Origin: Selaginella moellendorffii
Taxonomy: Eukaryota; Plantae; Lycopodiophyta
NCBI RefSeq assembly: GCF_000143415.4
Contig: NW_003314318.1
Location: 496,001-560,000, forward strand
Direction of reading: 5' to 3'
Length of the DNA: 64,000 bases
Shown here piece by piece: positions 3,152-53,733 of the stretch (position 1 is the first letter of the stretch; every line of letters begins with the position of its first letter). Under the pieces are notes generated by a model. That model was not told the origin of the DNA, did no database searches, and saw only the letters and a program-made list of their open reading frames with translations. The position numbers and the translations under genes were made by a program.

Positions 3152-4098
3152 ATGGAGGCAGTGTCAACGATTTCGAGGCCGCATTGCGGTGAGTCGGCGC
3201 AGCCGAGGCGATTGGAAAGCTCGTTTCTAGGGAAATTTAGGTCGCCGGCGATGGATCGGGCGGCCATAGCGAGCAGCGAGCGATCTTTGCAAGTCTTGAC
3301 GATTGAAGCGTCTAAGAGGAAAGGGCCGATGCGGAGGATGCAGCAGCAGCAGCAGATGCAGCAAAGATCACTCCCGAAAGTCCCAGCGGCGGAGGACGAC
3401 AATCCGCGATTCGTGATCTTCATTCGCAGTAAGAACGTAAGCTCACGATCGATCGCTCTCTTTTCTGGTTTCTTGCTCGTTCTTTGGAATCTAATACTTT
3501 CTTCCAGGTTCCACTTTGGTACCCTTTAAACATTGTCTCGGGAGGAAATGCGGCAAAATTCATGGTGGGAGTCACTAAGAACGAGTGGGGAAAGAAGATC
3601 TATGGCAACAGCTTGACAAACAACATCGGTGCCGCTGTTTACAAAGTAAGCACGCCGATCGGAAAGATCGGACTGAAACAAACATCGGCTTTGGAAATTC
3701 ATAACGATGGTTTCTTAGATGTGACCAGGACGAGGAGAAGATCATTGCCTCGGTGGTGAAGACCTACCCCACGCTGAAAACAGCGAAGGAGTTCCAGTTT
3801 GGTTACAAGCTCGTGGTAAGTGCTCAGATTGTTCTCGAGCTCGATCACACTGCTTCGATCGTCACAAATCTCTTGCTTCTTGAAACAGGACGAAGAGAAA
3901 GCCAACGAAGCTCTCCGGCCTGTGGATGTCACTCTGGTCAGGATCTCACTTATTTTTTCCTCTCGCCAAAGTTCTAAGCTTTTTTTCTTGTTCTTGATCC
4001 AGATTCCTCCCAAAGAGGAGCTCAAGCCCATCACAGAGAAGGTCACCGACTTCGTGGGAAAGGGCATGGACAACTTGAAGAGCTCCCTTGGCCTCTAA
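3152..4098 (+). CDS. HHL1: HYPERSENSITIVE TO HIGH LIGHT 1 homologue (thylakoid PSII repair protein)
   Basis: Exons give EDDNPRFVIFIR..WYPLNIV.GG..AKFMV..KDEEKI..TAKEFQFGYKLV..IPPKEELK; GT-AG introns; transit peptide. Confidence 0.85.
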
Positions 4099-4191
4099 AA
4101 TTTTCAAACCGCCAGAATATTCTCACAATCTCCCGCGAGTTTTTCAACGGCCTGGATCTCTCTCGTCACGAGCGGCTGGGATTTCGACCTA

Positions 4192-4235
4192 ATTAGGGTT
4201 TAGGGTTTATGGCGGCTGGGAGAGGGCTTTATAAG
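4192..4235 (+). promoter_or_regulatory. Telo-boxes plus TATA box, probable promoter of the downstream snoRNA cluster
   Basis: attagggttttagggttta at about 4192-4210 and tttataa at about 4228, 50-90 nt upstream of the predicted snoRNAs; telo-box plus TATA is typical of plant snoRNA and ribosome-biogenesis promoters. Confidence 0.6.
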
Positions 4236-4284
4236 GATGCGCGAGAACGAAGGGTTTTTGCGTGGACGGACTCACAATCTAGAA

Positions 4285-4467
4285 GTGGAGCGGCTTGTTT
4301 TGGTGTCGTAAGGTCCACGGTGGGTCGCCACAGATTGATTCACTGCGCTTGTTGATGATCGCCCTCTCGGGGGTGGGATTCCGAGCGGCAGCTATCACAT
4401 ATTCCATTGCCATGGGGAGCGGCTATGCCGCGATTACCTCTTTGGACAGACCATGTGATAAACATCC
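4285..4467 (+). ncRNA. Box H/ACA snoRNA, U17/snR30-like (18S rRNA processing)
   Basis: 5' hairpin (gtggagcggctt/gggtcgccac), hinge AGATTGA, internal hairpin (ctgcgcttg/cgagcggcag), 3' hairpin with basal stem tatcac/gtgata enclosing m1-like ATATTCCA (4399-4406) and m2-like AGACCAT (4448-4454), then ACA at 4462-4464 plus 3 nt. Confidence 0.75.
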
Positions 4468-4504
4468 CCCAAACTACTCTTCCTCTCTCTCTCGATTCTC
4501 TAGT

Positions 4505-4587
4505 GCAAGTGATGATCTTTCATCTTTTTCGCATCCATTCGCTATCAGAGAAATCTGTGCTGAGCCCGAGATGAAATGGTCTGATGC
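4505..4587 (+). ncRNA. Box C/D snoRNA candidate, target not assigned
   Basis: C box GTGATGA 4509-4515, D box CTGA 4581-4584, terminal stem gca/tgc, internal CTGA at 4560, internal stem tttcatct/agatgaaa; lies about 40 nt after the H/ACA RNA. Confidence 0.65.
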
Positions 4588-4783
4588 TCTGAATGAATGG
4601 AACCTTTGTTGTGTTTGAAGGATTTCTCCGAAAAACAAACCAAGAACATCCGTGAGCAAACCAACTAAACTTTACACTTTACAACCAAAAATCACAAAAA
4701 AATACCGAATGGATGAACTTTATGGTGGCAAAAGAAGCAAAACGAATTGTCTTTTTCCATTTTCTTCGTAAATAATCTCATTC

Positions 4784-7027
4784 TCAGTAGCTGCGTCCCC
4801 AGAGAGCCCACTTCTTTGCAGGTTTTTCCGAAGCAAAGCACTTGGTCCCTGAGAAAAAAGAAAGAATTAATCGCGAAAACCAGCGCCGAGGAATCGTGAT
4901 ACCTTCTGGGAGATCTGGCTGATCGAGAGGCATGCATAGCGTCTTGGCAGCTCCACTCTCTCCTTTGGTTCTGGCCTTGACGTCCTCTTCTACTTTCTGC
5001 CAAATATCAAACAATCGTGTAAGGAAATGTAAATGCAACGTTCTTGTAACTCACCTCTTCGTCACACCATGGAGCGAGCACCATCTTCTTATCGTCCAGG
5101 GCCTTCATAAACTCCTTCCAAGTGTACGCCTTGACGATGCAATCGTCCCTCTCTTTGCGAGCCTTTTCTAGCAGCTGGAGTTGGATCTCTTCCAAAAGCT
5201 CGCTGATACGGTCGACGATCTTGTCCATTGGCACATCTTCTTTAGCGCCAGTATCCCGCCTCACAACACGGACCTGTAACAAAAGAACCAAGTTCTCACT
5301 AGAACAAAAGAAGTGAACATACCTGACTGTTTGCTAGATCTCGAGGACCAATCTCAACTCTCAAAGGGACGCCTTTGAGCTCCCAATTCGAGTATTTCCA
5401 ACCCGGCGAATAGTTGTCTCTCGTATCCTCCTTCACTCTCAGTCCAGCGGCTTTAAGCTGGCGAGCTGTGCTAGCGGCGGCGTCAAAAAGCTTCTGTGTG
5501 TCCACGTCCTTGTAAGGCACTGGAATTATGATAACCTGTACTGGAGCGACGCGAGGAGGGAGCACCAGACCCTTGTCATCTCCGTGTACCATGATCATGA
5601 CGCCAATCTTACATGTAGCAATCAAACACCAAGTCAAGAATCAAGTGGAAAAAGAAGAAAAACTGCTTACTGTTCGAGTAGTCAGACCCCACGAATTCTG
5701 CCAAACTTTCTTACGCTCACGCTTCTCGTCCTCAAAAACAATGTCGAACATTTCCGCAAAGTTCTGGCCTAAGCAATGCGAGGTAGCACCCTGGATTCCA
5801 CGACCAGTGAGCGGAATAAATGCCTGGAACAAACAGCAACAGTTGAATAAGTTCAGGCTTCGAATCAGAATTTTTACCTCCACAGTCGTCGTGTAGAGTC
5901 CACCCGCGAACTTCTCGACTTCACTCTTCACCCCCTTGATGACGGGGATAGCGAGTAATTCCTCGTACACTCTTCGATAGAGATCAAGCACCGCATACAC
6001 TTCCTCATCCGCTTCTTCCTTGGTTGCATAAGCGGTGTGGCCTTCTTGCCAAAGAAACTCACGACTCCTGAAAAGAGAATTACGTATCATCTCAGAAAGA
6101 GAATCGAGGAGAAGCTACCTTATGAAAGGAGTTGGGTGCTTAAACTCCCAGCGAACCACGTTACACCACTGGTTGATCTTGAAAGGAAGATCTCTGTGAC
6201 CCCGAATCCTCTTAGCAAAAATGGGGTACATCACGGTTTCGCTGGTTGGACGGATGGCTATAGGGACTTCCAGAGCCGATTCTCCCGACTTTGTCACCCA
6301 TGCAACCTGGAAAACTGGATCATAGCATCGAGAAAAAAATAGTCGCGGATCTACCTCAGGAGCAAATCCCTCTACGTGTTTTTTTTCCGTGACAAGCGCT
6401 CTCTCGGAAACAAACAGTGGGAAGTACGCATTTTCCACTCCTAGATTTTTAATCTCCCCATCAAGAAAACGCTGTAAAAAGGAGAGAAGAAATAAAGTTA
6501 CGCTTTGCGATGAAAATCTAAGATCATTGACTTGCCTGGATCGACTCCCAGATCGCGTAAGACCATGGAAGAAGAATGTAGCAGCCGGAGATATCATAAT
6601 ACTCGATCATATCACCCATGACAACCACCTATGAATCGTTGAAAAGATAAAATCAAAGCTCTCCCGAGATCCAACCTAGTAATGCGCTTACCTCGCTATA
6701 CCACTCCCCGAAATTCTCCCCTTTCTTCACTGTGAGGCCAAGCCCGGTCTCCTTCTTCCCCTCCTTCTTGGCTGCAAGGCGCTCGAGACTAAGAAAGAAG
6801 CGCATTCGCGAAAAACTTTGCTTACCAGCTACTGGCACCTGCGATGGCTTCTTCTTCTCCTTCTTCTCCTTTTTCTTCGCCTCCACTGGCGCCATCGCCT
6901 CCGTCGCCTCCATTGGCGCCTTGGCCTCCGTCGCCTCCATTGGCCGCAACGCAAGAACCCTAAATCTCTGTAGAGGTTTAGCCAGGCGATTAAAGCCGCT
7001 AGACCTTAAGCCCGAAGAAACGAACAT
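4784..7027 (-). CDS. Prolyl-tRNA synthetase, eukaryote/archaeal type (multi-exon)
   Basis: Motifs [74 protein letters not shown] and C-terminal WALWGRSY; start is either ATG 7027 or ATG 6940. Confidence 0.95.
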
Positions 7028-8774: not shown

Positions 8775-8844
8775 TGATCCCAAGCGTACGGTAGATCACT
8801 GATTGTCATGCCGTACGAGTTCTTCATCAAAATTATATCATGGA

Positions 8845-11070
8845 ATGAAACGCAGTGACTGCCTTGGCTTGATCCAGGAATGCCGCAGCATCACGGTCGC
8901 AAGGGAGCTCCACAAGCGCATCCAATCGGCGATCCATGCCACTGATCTCTTTCTCCTCAACAAGCTCATCGAGATGTATGGCCGGTGTGGAAGTGCCGAG
9001 GATGCGCGGCTCGTCTTTGATTCCATGGCCACAAGGGATTGTTTCTCCTGGGATCTCATGCTCACAGTCTACTGCAAGAACCGCAAGATCGATCAAGCCA
9101 GGGAGATATTCCACTCGATGCCAGGCAGGAATCTCGTCTCTTGGAACTCTCTTCTTACTGCATATGCCAAATCTGGGCATCTGGATGAAGCCAAGGCGTT
9201 GTTTGATGCGATGCCGCAGAGAAATTTGGTGTCCTGGACGACAATGCTGCTAATCTTTACACAACACGGCAGAATCGAGTTATCAAAAACTATGTTCGAT
9301 GAAATGCCTGCGAAAGATTTGGTGGCCTGGACCGCGATGGTGGTTGCTTATGCCCAAACTGGGCATTTTGAGAAAGCGAGATTGATGTTTGATACAATGC
9401 CTGCTAGAAATCTCGTCTCTTGGAATGGATTACTCTCGGCTTTTTCACAGAACGGGTGTTTTAACCAAGCAAAGGAGATGTTCTTGACAATGCCTGAGAG
9501 GGATATCGTCTCGTGGAGTGCCATGCTTGCTGCATATGCCCAGAACAGGCATCTGGAGGACGCTGTAAGGATCTTTGCCGATATGCCAGAGACGAATCTA
9601 GTGTCTTGGAACGCAATTCTGTCGGCTTACAGTCACAATGGAGACGTGGAGAGACCAAAGTTAGCATTCAGTAAGATGCCAGAGCACGACATAGTGTCTT
9701 GGAGCGCTCTCCTCGCAGCATTTGCCCAGGCCGGGTATTTGGAAGATGCCAAGATTGTGCTGGATACAATGCCCGAGAAGAATCTTGTAGCGAGCAATGT
9801 GATGCTTTCGGCTTACGTCCAAGCTTGTCGAGTTGAGGATGCCAAGAGCTTATTCGATGGATTGTCGGAGAGGAGTATTGTGTCGTGGAATGCGATGTTA
9901 GGTGCGTATGCTCAGTCTGGAGACATGGAAAGGTTGAAAGAGCTGCTGGATCAGATGCCGCTCCACAACTTGATCTCGTGGAACACTTGTCTCAGCGCTT
10001 TTGCTCAGCACGGGCAGCTCAAGAACGCGAAGAGATTGTTCTCGGAGATGGTCGATCGAGACATAGTTTCGTGGAGCATCATGCTGGGAGCTTATGCCCA
10101 GACCGGCTTCGTGGGCGAGGCCGAGGAGATCTACAACACAATGCCGCAGAGGAATCTGGTGTGCTGGAATTCGATGCTCTCGGGATATGGCGAGAGCGGG
10201 CAACTGAGCAAAGCGAAGCAGCTCTTCGACGAGATGCCGGAACGAGATATCGTCTCGACGAGCGCCATGGTGGCTGCGTATTCTCGCCTGGGATTCGTGG
10301 AAGAGGCAAAGCACGTCCTGGACACGATGCCGCAGCATAACTCGGTATCGCTCAACACCTTGCTCGACGCTTACACTCGAAACGGCCACCTCGAGCTCGC
10401 AGTGGAGATGTTTCACGCAAGAATGCCACAGCGGGACGTGGTGGCCTGGAGCATTATGCTGGTTTTGTTCACACATCTCGGCGGCCATCTCCGGGAAGCA
10501 AAGAGGCTTTTTGATGGCATGCCCGAGCGAGACTCCATCGCTCACAGCGTCATTCTCTCGGCCTACGCTCACAACGCCGCTCACTTCCACGCGGCTTGCT
10601 CCATTTTCTACGAGACAAAGCTCGCAGCGATGGCGGACGGAGCCGGCTTTGCAGCGGTGATCGCTGCTTGCAGCCACGGAGGCAAAGCTTTCGTGGGAAG
10701 GGACTTGTTCGTGTCGATGGTGGCAGATCACGGCGTGAAGCCGAGTAAGCAGCACTACTCGTGCCTGGTCGATCTCCTAGCTCGCTCAGGATATCTAGTC
10801 GACTGCCAGGACCTCATAGCTCATATGCCCTTCGTCCCGGACGCTCTCGAGTGGACGTGCTTGCTCGCGGCTTGTTGCACGCTCGGCGGAAGCAGTGTGG
10901 AGATCGGGGCTCGAGCAGCAGGGTCTCTGGTGGAGATGGACGCTGGTAGCGCTCAAACTTTTGTGCTGCTCGCAAACTTGCGCTCGTGGTCAGGGGAGAG
11001 AGAGAACTTAACCAGAAGAGGTGGACCACTTCTGACCTCACGAGGTCAAAAAGTCAATGAAAGTCAATAG
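8845..11070 (+). CDS. PLS-class pentatricopeptide repeat protein with a long array of 31-aa S-type repeats and a C-terminal E-like region, no DYW domain
   Basis: Intronless; repeats like NLVSWNSLLTAYAKSGHLDEAKALFDAMPQR; HYSCLVDLLARSG and MPFVPD..W..LL.AC tail. Confidence 0.92.
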   Translation: MKRSDCLGLIQECRSITVARELHKRIQSAIHATDLFLLNKLIEMYGRCGSAEDARLVFDSMATRDCFSWDLMLTVYCKNRKIDQAREIFHSMPGRNLVSWNSLLTAYAKSGHLDEAKALFDAMPQRNLVSWTTMLLIFTQHGRIELSKTMFDEMPAKDLVAWTAMVVAYAQTGHFEKARLMFDTMPARNLVSWNGLLSAFSQNGCFNQAKEMFLTMPERDIVSWSAMLAAYAQNRHLEDAVRIFADMPETNLVSWNAILSAYSHNGDVERPKLAFSKMPEHDIVSWSALLAAFAQAGYLEDAKIVLDTMPEKNLVASNVMLSAYVQACRVEDAKSLFDGLSERSIVSWNAMLGAYAQSGDMERLKELLDQMPLHNLISWNTCLSAFAQHGQLKNAKRLFSEMVDRDIVSWSIMLGAYAQTGFVGEAEEIYNTMPQRNLVCWNSMLSGYGESGQLSKAKQLFDEMPERDIVSTSAMVAAYSRLGFVEEAKHVLDTMPQHNSVSLNTLLDAYTRNGHLELAVEMFHARMPQRDVVAWSIMLVLFTHLGGHLREAKRLFDGMPERDSIAHSVILSAYAHNAAHFHAACSIFYETKLAAMADGAGFAAVIAACSHGGKAFVGRDLFVSMVADHGVKPSKQHYSCLVDLLARSGYLVDCQDLIAHMPFVPDALEWTCLLAACCTLGGSSVEIGARAAGSLVEMDAGSAQTFVLLANLRSWSGERENLTRRGGPLLTSRGQKVNESQ

Positions 11071-16286: not shown

Positions 16287-17035
16287 CAAGGTTTGACTGA
16301 CCACACAACCGTTGACTGTTATGGGGAATTTTATTGACCATTGAGCTATCCGTTGACTCTGCAGCCGTTGACTATCATGGAATTGGCCGACTTTGGAAGA
16401 GCTTTTGGTTTGTAACAAGATTTTAGACTTCTCGCGCGGAATCTAGAGACATTTTTGGTTACTTTTGAGTGGCTCATGTCAAGAAATTCAACCATTATCT
16501 TTTTGTGCTTCAGCGTTTGATCTCAGAAGCGCGGATAGTTTGTAATCATCGCCACAAGGAAAGGAAAAGAAAGAACTCCAGACAAACAAGTGCTCATTTC
16601 CCTAAAAGATTTTCAGGCACTAGCACGAAGAATGCCTCTGAATTTGATGGTACAGGAAGAGTAATCAGAGCACTGCAATTCCCCAAACGTGACGAGACTA
16701 GACGAGAAGAGTCAGAAATTGGGTTTTCTAGGCCCAGCAAATCGCTCATAACAATCGGAGCCCAGTGCGGTTTCATCAGCCTCAAAAAGAAAGAGAAATC
16801 TATCTATCAAATCCGGCAGCTATAGCAAAGAGCGAAGCCTGACGACCCACAGACCAAAGCATCGCGGCATTAGAAGCTTTGCGAGAACGATGTGCGAGCG
16901 CCATTGTCACAGGCACGAAGAGGAAGCGCGCCGCAAAGAAAAAGGAGGCGCTCGACCAAAACCCTAACAGCAGATAAAGAACCCTAAGAATGCGATTAAC
17001 TAACTAGATTAACCATTTTAAGTTAGAACGAAAAT

Positions 17036-17106
17036 GCGTCAGTAGTCCAACAGTTAGGATAATTGCCTTCCAGCAATGGACCCGAGTTCGACTCTCGGCT
17101 GACATG
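17036..17106 (+). tRNA. tRNA-Gly(TCC) degenerate copy 1 (probable pseudogene)
   Basis: GCGTCAGTAGTCCAACAGTTAGGATAATTGCCTTCCAGCAAT..GTTCGACTC..; one nt missing from the anticodon arm and the 3' acceptor strand mutated (gacat). Confidence 0.7.
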
Positions 17107-17123
17107 TTTGAAGGTTATAAAAT

Positions 17124-17159
17124 GCGTCAATTGCCTTCCAAGAGTTCGACTCTCGGCTG
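17124..17159 (+). pseudogene. Internally deleted tRNA-Gly(TCC) remnant
   Basis: gcgtca-attgccttccaa-gagttcgactctcggctg, lacking the D-arm and part of the anticodon/variable arm. Confidence 0.7.
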
Positions 17160-17214
17160 TTTAAAGAATTTAAAGTAAGCCAAAGACTAACCCGTTTTAG
17201 TTACTCATAAAAAT

Positions 17215-17286
17215 GCGTCAGTAGTCCAACGGTTGGGATAATTGCCTTCCAAGAAATTGACCCGAGTTCGACTCTCGGCTGACGCA
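17215..17286 (+). tRNA. trnG-UCC: tRNA-Gly(TCC), full length with one anticodon-stem mismatch
   Basis: 72 nt; acceptor GCGTCAG/CTGACGC+A; anticodon loop CTTCCAA; T-arm CCGAG TTCGACT CTCGG; G:A mismatch in the anticodon stem. Confidence 0.8.
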
Positions 17287-17427
17287 AGCTTTTAAAGAAT
17301 TTAAAGTAAGCCAAAGTTAACTAAGATTAACCTCATAAAAATACGTCAGTAGTGCAGCGGTTACCTGCAAGCTTTAAAGGAAGCCAAAGTTAACTAAGAT
17401 TAACCCGTCTTAGTTACTCATAAAAAT

Positions 17428-17498
17428 GCGTCAGTAGTCCAACGGTAAGGATAACTGCCTTCCAAGCAATAGACCGAGTTCGACTCTCGGCTGACGCA
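17428..17498 (+). tRNA. trnG-UCC: tRNA-Gly(TCC), near full length
   Basis: 71 nt; intact acceptor stem and T-arm; C:A mismatch in the anticodon stem; 3-nt variable loop. Confidence 0.75.
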
Positions 17499-17576
17499 AA
17501 AAGAAACAACTTTTCACCTTTTCTTAAGTTCTATTCTAAGGGTTTAAAGTAAAAAGCAAAAACTTGGTTCCTTCTT

Positions 17577-52545: not shown

Positions 52546-53733
52546 CTTGATACACAATGACCTTTAAAGTTATTAGAACCTAACTGTTACGATAATTTAT
52601 TAAAGGTAAGAGTGTTTAGGATGTAGGGTTTGGAATGTGCGCTTTCTTCCTCTCCAAATCCAAGCAATGCCGCTCTTTTCCTGTTGAGTTCCTAGAATGC
52701 GCCATGCCTGTGCGCTGCGAATCCATGTTTTTCTTGCCCGGAAATGCCTTGCAAGTGATGCTCTACACTTGATCGCTGAAAGTTTTCTCATTTCTCAGGT
52801 AAGTCCTGTTGAGAAACTATCCACACCTGATGCAATGCCAAGGCACTGATACTGATATGGGCTTGCGTGCTTGAGAGAAAAGAAAAGGAAAAGGAGAGAC
52901 TTGGAAGAGAGGCAGGAATTTCTTGTGGCTTGTTTTTGGAATCCAATGCCGCCGTGCTAAAGTTTAACTAGCTAGTGGCTTTCTCTGGGCCTGGCCCTGT
53001 GTCCTTGGCTCATTAGACTTGTATTTCTTTTGTGGATGCTTGTTTGTACTCGTGCTTGCTGCTGCTGCTATCATTCTCGTACCACTGCTATTTTAGCTCT
53101 CTCTCTCTTGTTGTTGCCGAATTGAGTGATTGATACTCCATATCCCGCAACATCCCAGCGAGAGGAATTATCCATTAATTAGCAGTGAGAGCAAGGAAAG
53201 TGATAGGCTCTCACTCGGGGCACTCCTTTTCCTCTTCCTTCTTGGGAGTTCTTGGGAGCTTTCATACTGTACAAGTGTTGCAAGTGTACAGGAAGAACAG
53301 AACTTACAACGTTCTTTGTTTGTGTGCTCTGTTTCAGGGAGTTTTGTTCACAGTCTCACACAAACATACAAAGAGAGGTATGGGCATCTCCCTGTGGCAG
53401 GCCGAATATCACACCAAAGCCGGATACAGATACAGATCGGATCACCCGGGTACGCTTTTATATTATTTCCAGAGCAGGCTAAAGAAGTGAGACAAAATGT
53501 AAGGGGTGGGAGGAAGGAGTAGTCTATTCTTTCTTCTAGGCACGGAACTAGAAACCATGGCTGGTGGATCCAGCCGCTCACCGCTGCTGGTCACCGCTAC
53601 AAGATGTGAGAGTCGTGGGCTTTGAGCTTCTGGACAAAGCAGCGAGGAAAAAGAAGAGTTTTTTCTCCTCCTTTCCCATCTCAGAGGTGTGTAGTCATAG
53701 ATAGGGATAAAAGGAGGAGCGGACAGGAGGGAT

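What the first reader, a model, noticed from the sequence alone, without database searches (positions are those of the whole stretch)
4285..4467. U17/snR30-like H/ACA snoRNA in a plant, with m1/m2 motifs that appear to co-vary with 18S rRNA
Seen: three hairpins, a terminal ACA+3, and a 3' hairpin whose basal stem (tatcac/gtgata) is followed by ATATTCCA on one side and preceded by AGACCAT on the other. Known: yeast snR30 and vertebrate U17 carry m1 AUAUUCCUA and m2 AAACCAU in this position and pair with 18S expansion segment 6 for pre-rRNA cleavage rather than pseudouridylation. Inference: UAUUCCAU and AGACCA would pair with AUGGAAUA and UGGUCU, which is how I recall ES6 in seed-free plant 18S (from memory, unverified). 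I know of no well-characterised land-plant orthologue but cannot check that. The H box is imperfect (AGATTGA).
Basis: partly seen in the sequence, partly recalled or inferred. Interest (0 to 1): 0.88.

Follow-up and report, generated by a model that had tools for sequence, protein, structure and literature searches.

The report
Candidate plant U17/snR30 snoRNA
An expressed H/ACA small nucleolar RNA of a spikemoss carries, in the right place and at the right spacing, the two short motifs by which yeast snR30 and human U17 dock on 18S rRNA so that it can be processed. The papers I could search report no plant counterpart of this essential RNA, so this is a strong but not yet proven candidate.

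Summary
A 3'-terminal hairpin (4393-4460) has a 6-bp basal stem that directly encloses AUAUUCCAU (m1-like) and AGACCAU (m2-like). Exactly 7 nt separate m2 from ACA (4462-4464), which is the spacing reported as invariant for U17/snR30.

The motif combination occurs once in the window and in none of 100 shuffles. With the stem required, about 0.004 chance cases are expected per 212-Mb genome.

In one small-RNA-like run, a sequencing adapter follows position 4467 directly. That run's coverage begins at 4183, so the RNA is probably about 285 nt rather than 183. It would consist of a leader, a long 5' domain, an imperfect H box, an internal hairpin and the 3' hairpin, as in snR30/U17.

m1 is a perfect 8-bp complement of AUGGAAUA at the rm1 position of non-seed green-lineage 18S. 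The single m2 change (A2 to G) pairs with a C found at that rm2 position in all 57 distinct green-lineage ES6 variants recovered, where yeast has U.

Three things remain unresolved. The host's own 18S could not be obtained. No orthologue was found in other plants. Rfam gives no hit. I put the confidence that this is a genuine U17/snR30 orthologue at about 0.7.

The parts
4183..4467 (+). Probable full RNA, about 285 nt
   Evidence: Run X4 does not cover the highly expressed upstream mRNA at 4000-4182. From 4183 to about 4478 its contig depth is 110-450, and it falls to about 50 beyond. The adapter follows 4467 directly in + orientation. The start is inferred from where the contigs begin, not from mapped read ends.
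4183..4209 (+). 5' leader containing TTAGGGTTTAGGGTTTA (4193-4209), plant telomere repeats in G-strand sense (telo-box-like)
   Evidence: It lies inside the X4 contig 4183-4306. Yeast snR30 also has a 5' leader (PMC7601244). The role here is unknown.
4210..4330 (+). Long branched 5' domain closed by helix UGGCGGCU (4210-4217) / GGUCGCCA (4323-4330)
   Evidence: The minimum-free-energy fold of 4205-4338 has z -2.40, with 5 of 200 shuffles as stable. This is prediction only, with no comparative support.
4330..4342 (+). Hinge with H-box-like ACAGAUUGA (4330-4338); no exact ANANNA
   Evidence: Allelic variants at 4341/4342 lie just 3' of it.
4343..4391 (+). Internal hairpin between hinge and 3' hairpin
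   Evidence: Fold z -1.84. An internal hairpin at this place is a described feature of yeast snR30 and human U17 (PMC7601244).
4393..4460 (+). 3'-terminal hairpin: basal stem 4393-4398/4455-4460, pocket, upper stem-loop 4408-4447
   Evidence: Fold z -2.48, with 3 of 200 shuffles as stable. No variant was reported here in the four runs laid.
4399..4407 (+). m1-like motif AUAUUCCAU (consensus AUAUUCCUA), 5' strand of the pocket, next to the basal stem
   Evidence: UAUUCCAU is a perfect 8-bp complement of AUGGAAUA at the rm1 position of 18S in L063, L024 and L065.
4448..4454 (+). m2-like motif AGACCAU (consensus AAACCAU), 3' strand of the pocket, next to the basal stem
   Evidence: It lies 7 nt before ACA. 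G2 would pair with the C at rm2 position 5 present in all green-lineage 18S recovered.
4462..4464 (+). ACA box; RNA 3' end at 4467
   Evidence: In run X4 the adapter AGATCGGAAGAGCACACGTCT follows 4467 directly (table 7). A second, longer end lies at 4478.
4504..4588 (+). Downstream C/D-box snoRNA candidate (C box GUGAUGA 4509-4515, D box CUGA 4581-4584, terminal GCA/UGC)
   Evidence: Read from the sequence. Covered at lower depth in X4. No Rfam hit and no convincing rRNA target. It suggests a snoRNA cluster.

Best explanation
This is the spikemoss orthologue of the U17/snR30 box H/ACA snoRNA. Earlier notes of this scan name the genome Selaginella moellendorffii.

Shown:
- A + strand RNA accumulates from about 4183 to 4467 and ends 3 nt after an ACA box.
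- Its 3'-terminal hairpin has a pseudouridylation-pocket-like internal loop whose top lies 14 nt from ACA.
- The two strands of that loop, on the side next to the basal stem, carry AUAUUCCAU and AGACCAU.

Inferred, by analogy with yeast and human. [quoted passage not shown] It docks on nascent pre-rRNA by pairing m1 with rm1 (AUGGAAUA) and m2 with rm2 (predicted UGGUCU) in expansion segment 6 of 18S, on either side of a small rRNA hairpin. Because the rRNA binds to the basal half of the pocket rather than the distal half, no uridine reaches the catalytic site. The RNP would therefore act as a chaperone or assembly platform needed for the early cleavages that release 18S rRNA, and not as a modification guide.

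The long 5' domain, leader and internal hairpin are lineage-specific additions, as in other species.
For: 1. Motifs and geometry. 7 of 9 m1 positions and 6 of 7 m2 positions are identical to the consensus. [quoted passage not shown] PMC2664660 reports the 7-nt spacing as invariant and functionally required. PMC7601244 gives 14-16 nt for the pocket top and describes the basal location.

2. Chance. About 0.004 cases are expected per genome with the stem required. None was found in 100 shuffles or in 1.2 Mb of control DNA.

3. Expression.
- The stretch is held by runs from 8 studies.
- X1 and X9 are shown to be RNA, because the intron 3938-4001 is spliced out.
- X4 covers 4183-4478 at high depth but not the neighbouring mRNA.
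- In X4 the adapter follows 4467, which is ACA+3, directly.
- Only three adapter junctions were reported in about 620 covered nt.

4. Architecture. A leader, a long 5' domain, a hinge, an internal hairpin and a 3' hairpin, as described for snR30/U17. The domains fold better than shuffles.

5. Complementarity.
- m1 pairs perfectly over 8 bp with rm1 of non-seed green 18S.
- Yeast rm2 forms a perfect 6-bp helix with AAACCA, so it is UGGUUU.
- All 57 distinct green-lineage ES6 variants among the 120 contigs recovered have C at rm2 position 5.
- The candidate's only m2 change, A2 to G, is the Watson-Crick partner of that C.
- The rRNA between rm1 and rm2 is about 28 nt long and forms a hairpin, as in yeast.

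6. No canonical pseudouridylation target for this pocket exceeds shuffled controls in a plant rDNA unit.

7. It is not protein-coding. The ORF over it has no homologue in either protein search.
Against: - No Rfam hit to SNORA73/snR30 or to any other family, even at E<=10 on an 801-nt stretch.
- The H box is not a proper ANANNA.
- The host's own 18S ES6 was not available. If its rm2 is UGGCCU, as in seed plants and in two of the three non-seed sequences, m2 would have a central A-C mismatch.
- No orthologue was found in any other species, so there is no comparative support for the structure or the motifs.
- The expression evidence comes from assembled contigs, not reads. The library type of X4 is inferred from adapter orientation and coverage.
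- The 5' end is not mapped.
- Function was not tested.
Confidence: 0.7

Rival explanations
1. It is an ordinary or orphan box H/ACA snoRNA, either a pseudouridylation guide for an rRNA, snRNA or other target or one of unknown function. On this reading its resemblance to m1/m2 is coincidental and it plays no part in 18S processing.
For: - It is clearly H/ACA-like and expressed.
- Rfam does not recognise it as SNORA73/snR30.
- m2 differs from the otherwise invariant AAACCAU.
- Complementarity to the host 18S is unverified.
- Plants have several orphan H/ACA snoRNAs (PMC2875012).
Against: - The coincidence needed is large: two motifs on the correct strands, on the basal side, at exactly 7 nt from ACA.
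- No canonical target above chance was found in a plant rDNA unit.
- The three-hairpin layout with an internal hairpin matches snR30/U17.
- The single m2 change matches the green-lineage rm2 C.
Confidence: 0.2
2. It is not a discrete functional RNA. On this reading the motifs are a chance match within read-through transcripts from the HHL1 gene or a snoRNA-cluster precursor, and the adapter junctions mark degradation products.
For: - RNA-seq contigs run continuously from HHL1 into the region (X9 to 4340, X1 to 4234).
- There are other adapter junctions, at 4306 and 4478.
- The folding z-score of the whole RNA is unremarkable.
Against: - X4 depth is 110-450 over 4183-4478, against zero on the HHL1 3' part and about 50 downstream.
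- One of only three junctions falls exactly at ACA+3.
- The individual hairpins are more stable than shuffles.
- Motif chance is about 0.004 per genome.
Confidence: 0.05
3. It is an H/ACA RNA with a different specialised role, for example a Cajal-body or telomere-linked RNA. The telomere-repeat sequence in its 5' leader prompts this idea.
For: TTAGGGTTTAGGGTTTA at 4193-4209 lies inside the apparent transcript. Vertebrate telomerase RNA has an H/ACA domain (established knowledge).
Against: - The repeat is in G-strand sense, so it cannot template TTTAGGG synthesis.
- No CAB box (UGAG) is present in the terminal loops.
- Telo-boxes are common promoter or 5' elements of plant translation-apparatus and snoRNA genes (established knowledge). 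The repeat may simply be promoter DNA if the true start is downstream.
Confidence: 0.05

Closest known systems
Saccharomyces cerevisiae snR30 (606 nt, essential box H/ACA snoRNA)
   Same: - 5' leader, long 5' hairpin, H region, internal hairpin and 3' hairpin
[quoted passage not shown]
- 7 nt from m1/m2 to ACA
- pairing to rm1/rm2 on either side of a hairpin in 18S ES6
(PMC2664660, PMC7601244)
   Different: - The candidate is about 285 nt.
- m1 ends CAU rather than CUA, which gives 8 bp rather than 6 bp with rm1.
- m2 is AGACCAU rather than AAACCAU.
- The H box is imperfect.
- The essential distal 3'-hairpin element and the C2/C3 contacts were not assessed.
- No functional data exist.
Vertebrate U17 / E1 / SNORA73 (about 205-220 nt)
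   Same: A size of the same order, a small internal hairpin, and a 3' hairpin with m1/m2 and ACA.
   Different: - Vertebrate U17 is encoded in introns. This one lies between HHL1 and ProRS, next to a C/D snoRNA candidate.
- It gives no match to the Rfam model.
- The m2 variant.
Trypanosoma brucei snR30 (Barth et al. 2005, as described in PMC2664660)
   Same: It is a precedent for a diverged recognition motif that is kept functional by a compensating change in the cognate 18S.
   Different: In T. brucei it is m1/rm1 that changed, while m2 is invariant. Here m2 is the changed motif, and the rRNA partner is inferred only from other green-lineage 18S.
Tetrahymena thermophila and S. pombe U17 (about 240 and 325 nt)
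   Same: Intermediate lengths similar to this RNA. The m1 end is variable (AUAUUCCUG in Tetrahymena), which shows that the last two m1 positions are free to vary.
   Different: m2 is invariant in both.

Membership tests
U17/snR30 box H/ACA snoRNA | Box H/ACA RNA whose 3' end lies 3 nt after an ACA that follows a terminal hairpin | tested here: met
   ACA is at 4462-4464. In run X4 the adapter follows 4467 directly, in + orientation.
U17/snR30 box H/ACA snoRNA | H box (ANANNA) in the hinge after the 5' hairpin | tested here: inconclusive
   The hinge ACAGAUUGA (4330-4338) has no exact ANANNA; ACAGAU and AGAUUG(A) are near-matches. The review notes that the U17 H box is not needed for RNP formation in vitro, whereas the snR30 H box is needed in vivo.
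U17/snR30 box H/ACA snoRNA | m1 motif AUAUUCCUA on the 5' strand of the 3'-hairpin internal loop, next to the basal stem | tested here: met
   AUAUUCCAU at 4399-4407 directly follows the basal stem. The first 7 nt are identical. The last two positions also vary among known members (CUU, CUG).
U17/snR30 box H/ACA snoRNA | m2 motif AAACCAU on the 3' strand of the same loop, next to the basal stem | tested here: inconclusive
   AGACCAU at 4448-4454 is in the correct position, but position 2 is G, whereas all 14 listed members have A. The change fits the C at rm2 position 5 of green-lineage 18S.
U17/snR30 box H/ACA snoRNA | m1/m2 element exactly 7 nt upstream of ACA; top of the pocket 14-16 nt from ACA | tested here: met
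   GUGAUAA (7 nt) lies between m2 and ACA. The pocket top is 14 nt from ACA (criteria).
U17/snR30 box H/ACA snoRNA | m1 and m2 base-pair with rm1 and rm2 of the cognate 18S ES6 | tested here: inconclusive
   The host 18S could not be obtained. Against other green-lineage 18S, m1 gives 8 of 8 bp with L063, L024 and L065, and 8 bp including one G-U with seed plants. m2 gives 6 of 6 bp with L024 (UGGUCU) and 5 of 6 with UGGCCU.
U17/snR30 box H/ACA snoRNA | Internal hairpin between the H box and the 3' hairpin; long variable 5' domain | tested here: met
   Predicted hairpin 4343-4391 (z -1.84) and 5' domain 4205-4338 (z -2.40). This rests on structure prediction only.
U17/snR30 box H/ACA snoRNA | Match to the curated covariance models (Rfam SNORA73 / snR30) | tested here: not met
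   No hit at the gathering threshold, at E<=10 on 4000-4800 or at E<=5 on the whole window. To my knowledge those models are built from animal and fungal sequences, in which only about 16 nt are shared across kingdoms.
U17/snR30 box H/ACA snoRNA | Conservation of the RNA and its motifs in related species | tested here: inconclusive
   No orthologue was retrieved. Two metagenome pattern scans gave 0 hits and 118 chance hits. Contigs fetched beside ProRS or PPR genes carry no such motif. Only a second copy in the same genome is noted (s1-421263).
U17/snR30 box H/ACA snoRNA | Required for the early pre-rRNA cleavages and 18S accumulation; does not guide pseudouridylation | not testable with these tools
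   The only indirect evidence is that no canonical target above shuffled controls was found in a plant rDNA unit.
U17/snR30 box H/ACA snoRNA | Essential distal element of the 3' hairpin (yeast C561-G566/C572-A577) | not tested
   No consensus for this element was available to compare.

The most novel reading that the evidence does not exclude
Land plants do have a U17/snR30, and it was missed because its m2 motif has co-evolved with a green-lineage change in 18S ES6 (rm2 UGGUUU changed to UGGYCU). On this reading seed plants should carry AGGCCA at m2 and perhaps UAUCCC at m1. The spikemoss RNA then supplies the search key (pocket position, 7-nt spacing, species-specific complement of rm1/rm2) that would uncover the orthologue across plants. 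It would also give the first natural m2/rm2 co-variation for this essential RNA.
Probability: 0.55. Interest if true: 0.78.

Novelty: new member of a known kind. Interest (0 to 1): 0.68.

Why it matters
snR30/U17 is one of the very few snoRNAs essential for making the small ribosomal subunit. It is described as ubiquitous in eukaryotes, yet the plant literature states that it could not be identified in Arabidopsis and speculates that plants use another route (PMC8351944). A 2020 review lists no plant member (PMC7601244).

A credible plant orthologue would close that gap and make the plant snR30-ES6 interaction directly testable. If the m2 change really tracks the green-lineage rm2, it would also add natural co-variation evidence for the m2/rm2 helix, which so far rests on yeast genetics, plus one natural m1/rm1 example in trypanosomes.

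Tried and rejected
1. Rfam at three settings gave no hit at the locus.

2. I translated the ORF lying over the RNA (4295-4615) to catch spurious ORFs at orthologous loci. Neither the word-indexed search nor the exhaustive phmmer search found anything.

3. Synteny route.
- ProRS exon homologues reach at most 76% identity.
- The contigs fetched (L001-L004, L244) and the locus of a distant PPR relative from S. moellendorffii (L243) carry no such motif.
- The PPR search gave only 24-42% identity hits.

4. Exact look-ups of three window ORFs, meant to fetch the host's other copy, found none on record.

5. Metagenome pattern scans.
- The strict host-like pattern gave 0 hits.
None has a basal stem of 5 bp or more, so I take all to be chance.
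- This does not exclude orthologues, because the scan was cut off and the motif was a guess.
- I took none of the fetched contigs for human DNA.

6. Host 18S.
- It is not in the window.
- Earlier notes mention 18S fragments elsewhere in the genome, but give no sequence.
- As a substitute, 120 plant and algal 18S contaminant contigs from bacterial assemblies were used.

7. Supplementary files of two Arabidopsis snoRNA papers hold no sequences with the motifs. Atzorn et al. 2004 is not held.

8. A canonical pseudouridylation target search gave nothing above shuffles.

9. Target search for the downstream C/D candidate was unconvincing.

10. One literature search was mis-specified and uninformative.

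Full report
**What is in the sequence**

Between the stop codon of an HHL1-like gene (+ strand, ends 4097) and the 3' end of a prolyl-tRNA synthetase gene (- strand, from about 4770) lies a non-coding stretch. Its 3' part reads TATCAC-ATATTCCAT-(40 nt stem-loop)-AGACCAT-GTGATA-A-ACA-TCC, at 4393-4467.

The two hexamers form a 6-bp basal stem. ATATTCCAT and AGACCAT are the two strands of the internal loop directly above it. ACA lies exactly 7 nt after AGACCAT, and the top of the loop is 14 nt from ACA.

- The pattern ATATTCC-N30-60-ARACCAT-N7-ACA is found once in the window and in none of 100 shuffles.
- ATATTCC alone is at chance frequency.
- Analytically, about 1.5 such composites are expected in a 212-Mb genome, and about 0.004 once an abutting 6-bp stem is required.

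**Is it an RNA, and where does it end?**

The stretch 4240-4640 is held by 20 runs from 8 studies, all but one labelled as one organism. When contigs of four runs were laid on 4000-4800, two runs (X1, X9) proved to be RNA, because the intron 3938-4001 is spliced out in them.

Run X4 does not cover the strongly expressed HHL1 3' part at all (4000-4182). It covers 4183-4478 at contig depths of 110-450, and the region beyond at about 50.

In X4 the adapter AGATCGGAAGAGCACACGTCT follows positions 4306, 4467 and 4478 directly, each time in + orientation. I read this as a ligation-type small or mid-size RNA library reading the + strand; that is an inference.

With three junctions in about 620 covered bases, one hitting that exact base by chance has a probability of about 0.5%.

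The caveats are that these are assembled contigs and not reads, and that the library type is not on record.

**The 5' boundary**

X4 coverage starts at 4183, not at 4285. Folding 4183-4467 gives these parts:

- a short leader
- a long branched 5' domain closed by UGGCGGCU (4210-4217) / GGUCGCCA (4323-4330), z -2.40
- a hinge ACAGAUUGAUUCA
- an internal hairpin 4343-4391, z -1.84
- the 3' hairpin, z -2.48

The whole molecule is not more stable than shuffles (z -0.35 and -0.70), so the structure rests on the domains and on analogy.

The leader contains TTAGGGTTTAGGGTTTA. I first took this, together with TATAAGG at 4230, for a telo-box/TATA promoter with a start near 4260. The X4 coverage speaks against that, but only mapped read ends can settle it.

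**Comparison with snR30/U17**

Fayet-Lebaron et al. 2009 (PMC2664660) report the following:

- m1 (AUAUUCCUA) and m2 (AAACCAU) lie on opposite strands of the 3'-hairpin loop.
- They pair with rm1 and rm2 of 18S ES6, which are G802-A806 and U836-U841 in yeast.
- The element lies invariably 7 nt upstream of ACA.
- Shortening that distance by 2 nt abolishes function.

The 2020 review (PMC7601244) adds:

- The pocket top is 14-16 nt from ACA.
- snR30 has a 5' leader, an over-long 5' hairpin and an internal hairpin, and U17 also has a small internal hairpin.
- In 14 listed species m2 is invariant, while the last two m1 positions vary.

The candidate meets the position, strand, spacing and architecture criteria. 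It shares 7 of 9 m1 positions and 6 of 7 m2 positions. It fails the Rfam test, with no hit to any family at the gathering threshold or at E<=10. To my knowledge those models are built from animal and fungal sequences, whose only cross-kingdom conservation is these two short motifs. I therefore weigh this failure lightly, but it is a tested criterion that was not met.

**Complementarity to 18S**

The host 18S could not be obtained. As a substitute I scanned bacterial and archaeal assemblies for a green-lineage 18S signature. This recovered 120 contaminant plant or algal rDNA contigs, carrying 57 distinct ES6 variants.

| 18S source | rm1 region | rm2 region |
|---|---|---|
| All seed-plant variants | GCAUGGGAUAACA | GUUGGCCUUCGG |
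| L063 (non-seed) | AUGGAAUAA | UGGCCU |
| L065 (non-seed) | AUGGAAUAA | UGGCCU |
| L024 (non-seed, probably a marine green alga) | AUGGAAUAA | UGGUCU |

In all of them the roughly 28 nt between the two sites form a small hairpin, as in the yeast model.

The candidate's UAUUCCAU is a perfect 8-bp complement of AUGGAAUA, against 6 bp in yeast.

For m2, 5'-A1 G2 A3 C4 C5 A6-3' pairs antiparallel with 5'-U1 G2 G3 N4 N5 U6-3'. Yeast rm2 pairs perfectly with AAACCA and is therefore UGGUUU. Every green-lineage sequence has C at position 5. The candidate's only departure from the otherwise invariant m2 is G2, the Watson-Crick partner of that C.

This is the part of the co-variation claim that my data support. 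Its limits are that the positional homology between plant and yeast rm2 is inferred from spacing, and that a G would also pair with U as a wobble.

The other half depends on rm2 position 4. A3 needs U there, as in L024. With UGGCCU there would be a central A-C mismatch. The prediction for the host is therefore UGGUCU. It is unverified, and only one of the three non-seed sequences has it.

**Rival readings**

*An ordinary pseudouridylation guide.* A search of a complete plant rDNA unit (L012) for canonical bipartite targets of this pocket found nothing better than shuffled sequence. The best was 12 bp with 3 G-U pairs, and shuffles reach 12-13. Seed-plant rRNA was used and snRNAs were not tested, so this weakens that reading but does not exclude it.

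*A protein-coding explanation.* This is excluded for practical purposes, because the 107-codon ORF over the RNA has no homologue in either protein search.

*Degradation of read-through transcripts.* This does not explain the depth profile or the junction at ACA+3.

*A telomere-linked role.* The telomere-like leader prompted this idea, but the repeat is in G-strand sense and the loops lack a CAB box.

**Conservation**

This is the main gap. Earlier notes of this scan, which are unchecked AI notes, call the genome Selaginella moellendorffii. That fits the best PPR hits, which are all distant paralogues from that species.

The earlier notes also record an independent first-reader note of a 'candidate plant snR30/U17 snoRNA between ProRS and HHL1' on another piece of the genome (s1-421263). 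Given the identical gene neighbours, this is probably the second haplotype or a duplicate.

Variants seen in the runs are 4235 G>C, 4341 C>T and 4342 A>T. All lie outside the 3' hairpin. A diverged contig downstream (4573-4800) carries 5 substitutions and several indels. This is weakly consistent with constraint on the RNA.

Every attempt to reach another species failed or was inconclusive.

**Literature**

Within the searchable library, no paper reports a plant snR30/U17. [quoted passage not shown] Subscription journals are not covered, so novelty is 'as far as I could search'.

**Verdict**

This is a real, expressed H/ACA RNA with the defining recognition element of U17/snR30 in the defining position. 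It is most likely the plant (lycophyte) orthologue, with confidence of about 0.7. I classify it as a new member of a known kind, carrying a variant m2.

Noticed in passing
window 4193-4209: TTAGGGTTTAGGGTTTA is about 2.4 plant telomere repeats in G-strand sense (telo-box-like). It lies inside the apparent transcript if the 5' end at 4183 is real. It is either a promoter element or part of the RNA leader.
   Followed up: partly
window 4292-4303: The apical loop GGCUUGUUUUGG of the 5' domain is complementary (10 Watson-Crick and 2 G-U pairs) to 18S ES6 UCAAAGCAAGCC, about 35 nt 5' of rm1, in four green-lineage 18S sequences. This recalls the extra ES6 contact of the yeast snR30 5' hairpin. However, matches of this length occur at chance frequency, about 4 expected. 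An adapter junction at 4306 lies in this loop.
   Followed up: partly
window 4504-4588: A C/D-box snoRNA candidate lies directly downstream (C box GUGAUGA 4509-4515, D box CUGA 4581-4584, terminal GCA/UGC). It is covered in the RNA runs, has no Rfam hit, and no convincing rRNA target was found.
   Followed up: partly
window 16470-17499: A small RNA gene cluster: snoU36a (16470-16554, -), an snR76-like C/D snoRNA below the gathering score (16708-16784, -), and three tandem tRNA genes on the + strand. Two of the tRNAs are Gly-UCC and one has an aberrant anticodon loop.
   Followed up: no
window 52760-52834: An snoR101 match just at the Rfam gathering score (40.7 against 40).
   Followed up: no
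window 8803-11070: A 755-codon single-exon PPR ORF has no near-identical protein among 5.8 billion clusters (best 42% identity), although the genome is said to be S. moellendorffii. It is probably an unannotated gene.
   Followed up: partly
loci L005-L124 (genome contigs): More than 120 bacterial or archaeal genome assemblies carry plant or algal 18S rDNA contaminant contigs. Among them are leaf-nodule Candidatus Burkholderia assemblies, where the contaminant is presumably host rDNA.
   Followed up: no
window 4098-4234: The HHL1 mRNA contig in run X1 runs to 4234, and in X9 to 4340. The HHL1 3' UTR therefore overlaps the 5' part of the snoRNA transcript. The snoRNA may be made from read-through transcripts or from its own start inside that UTR.
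   Followed up: no
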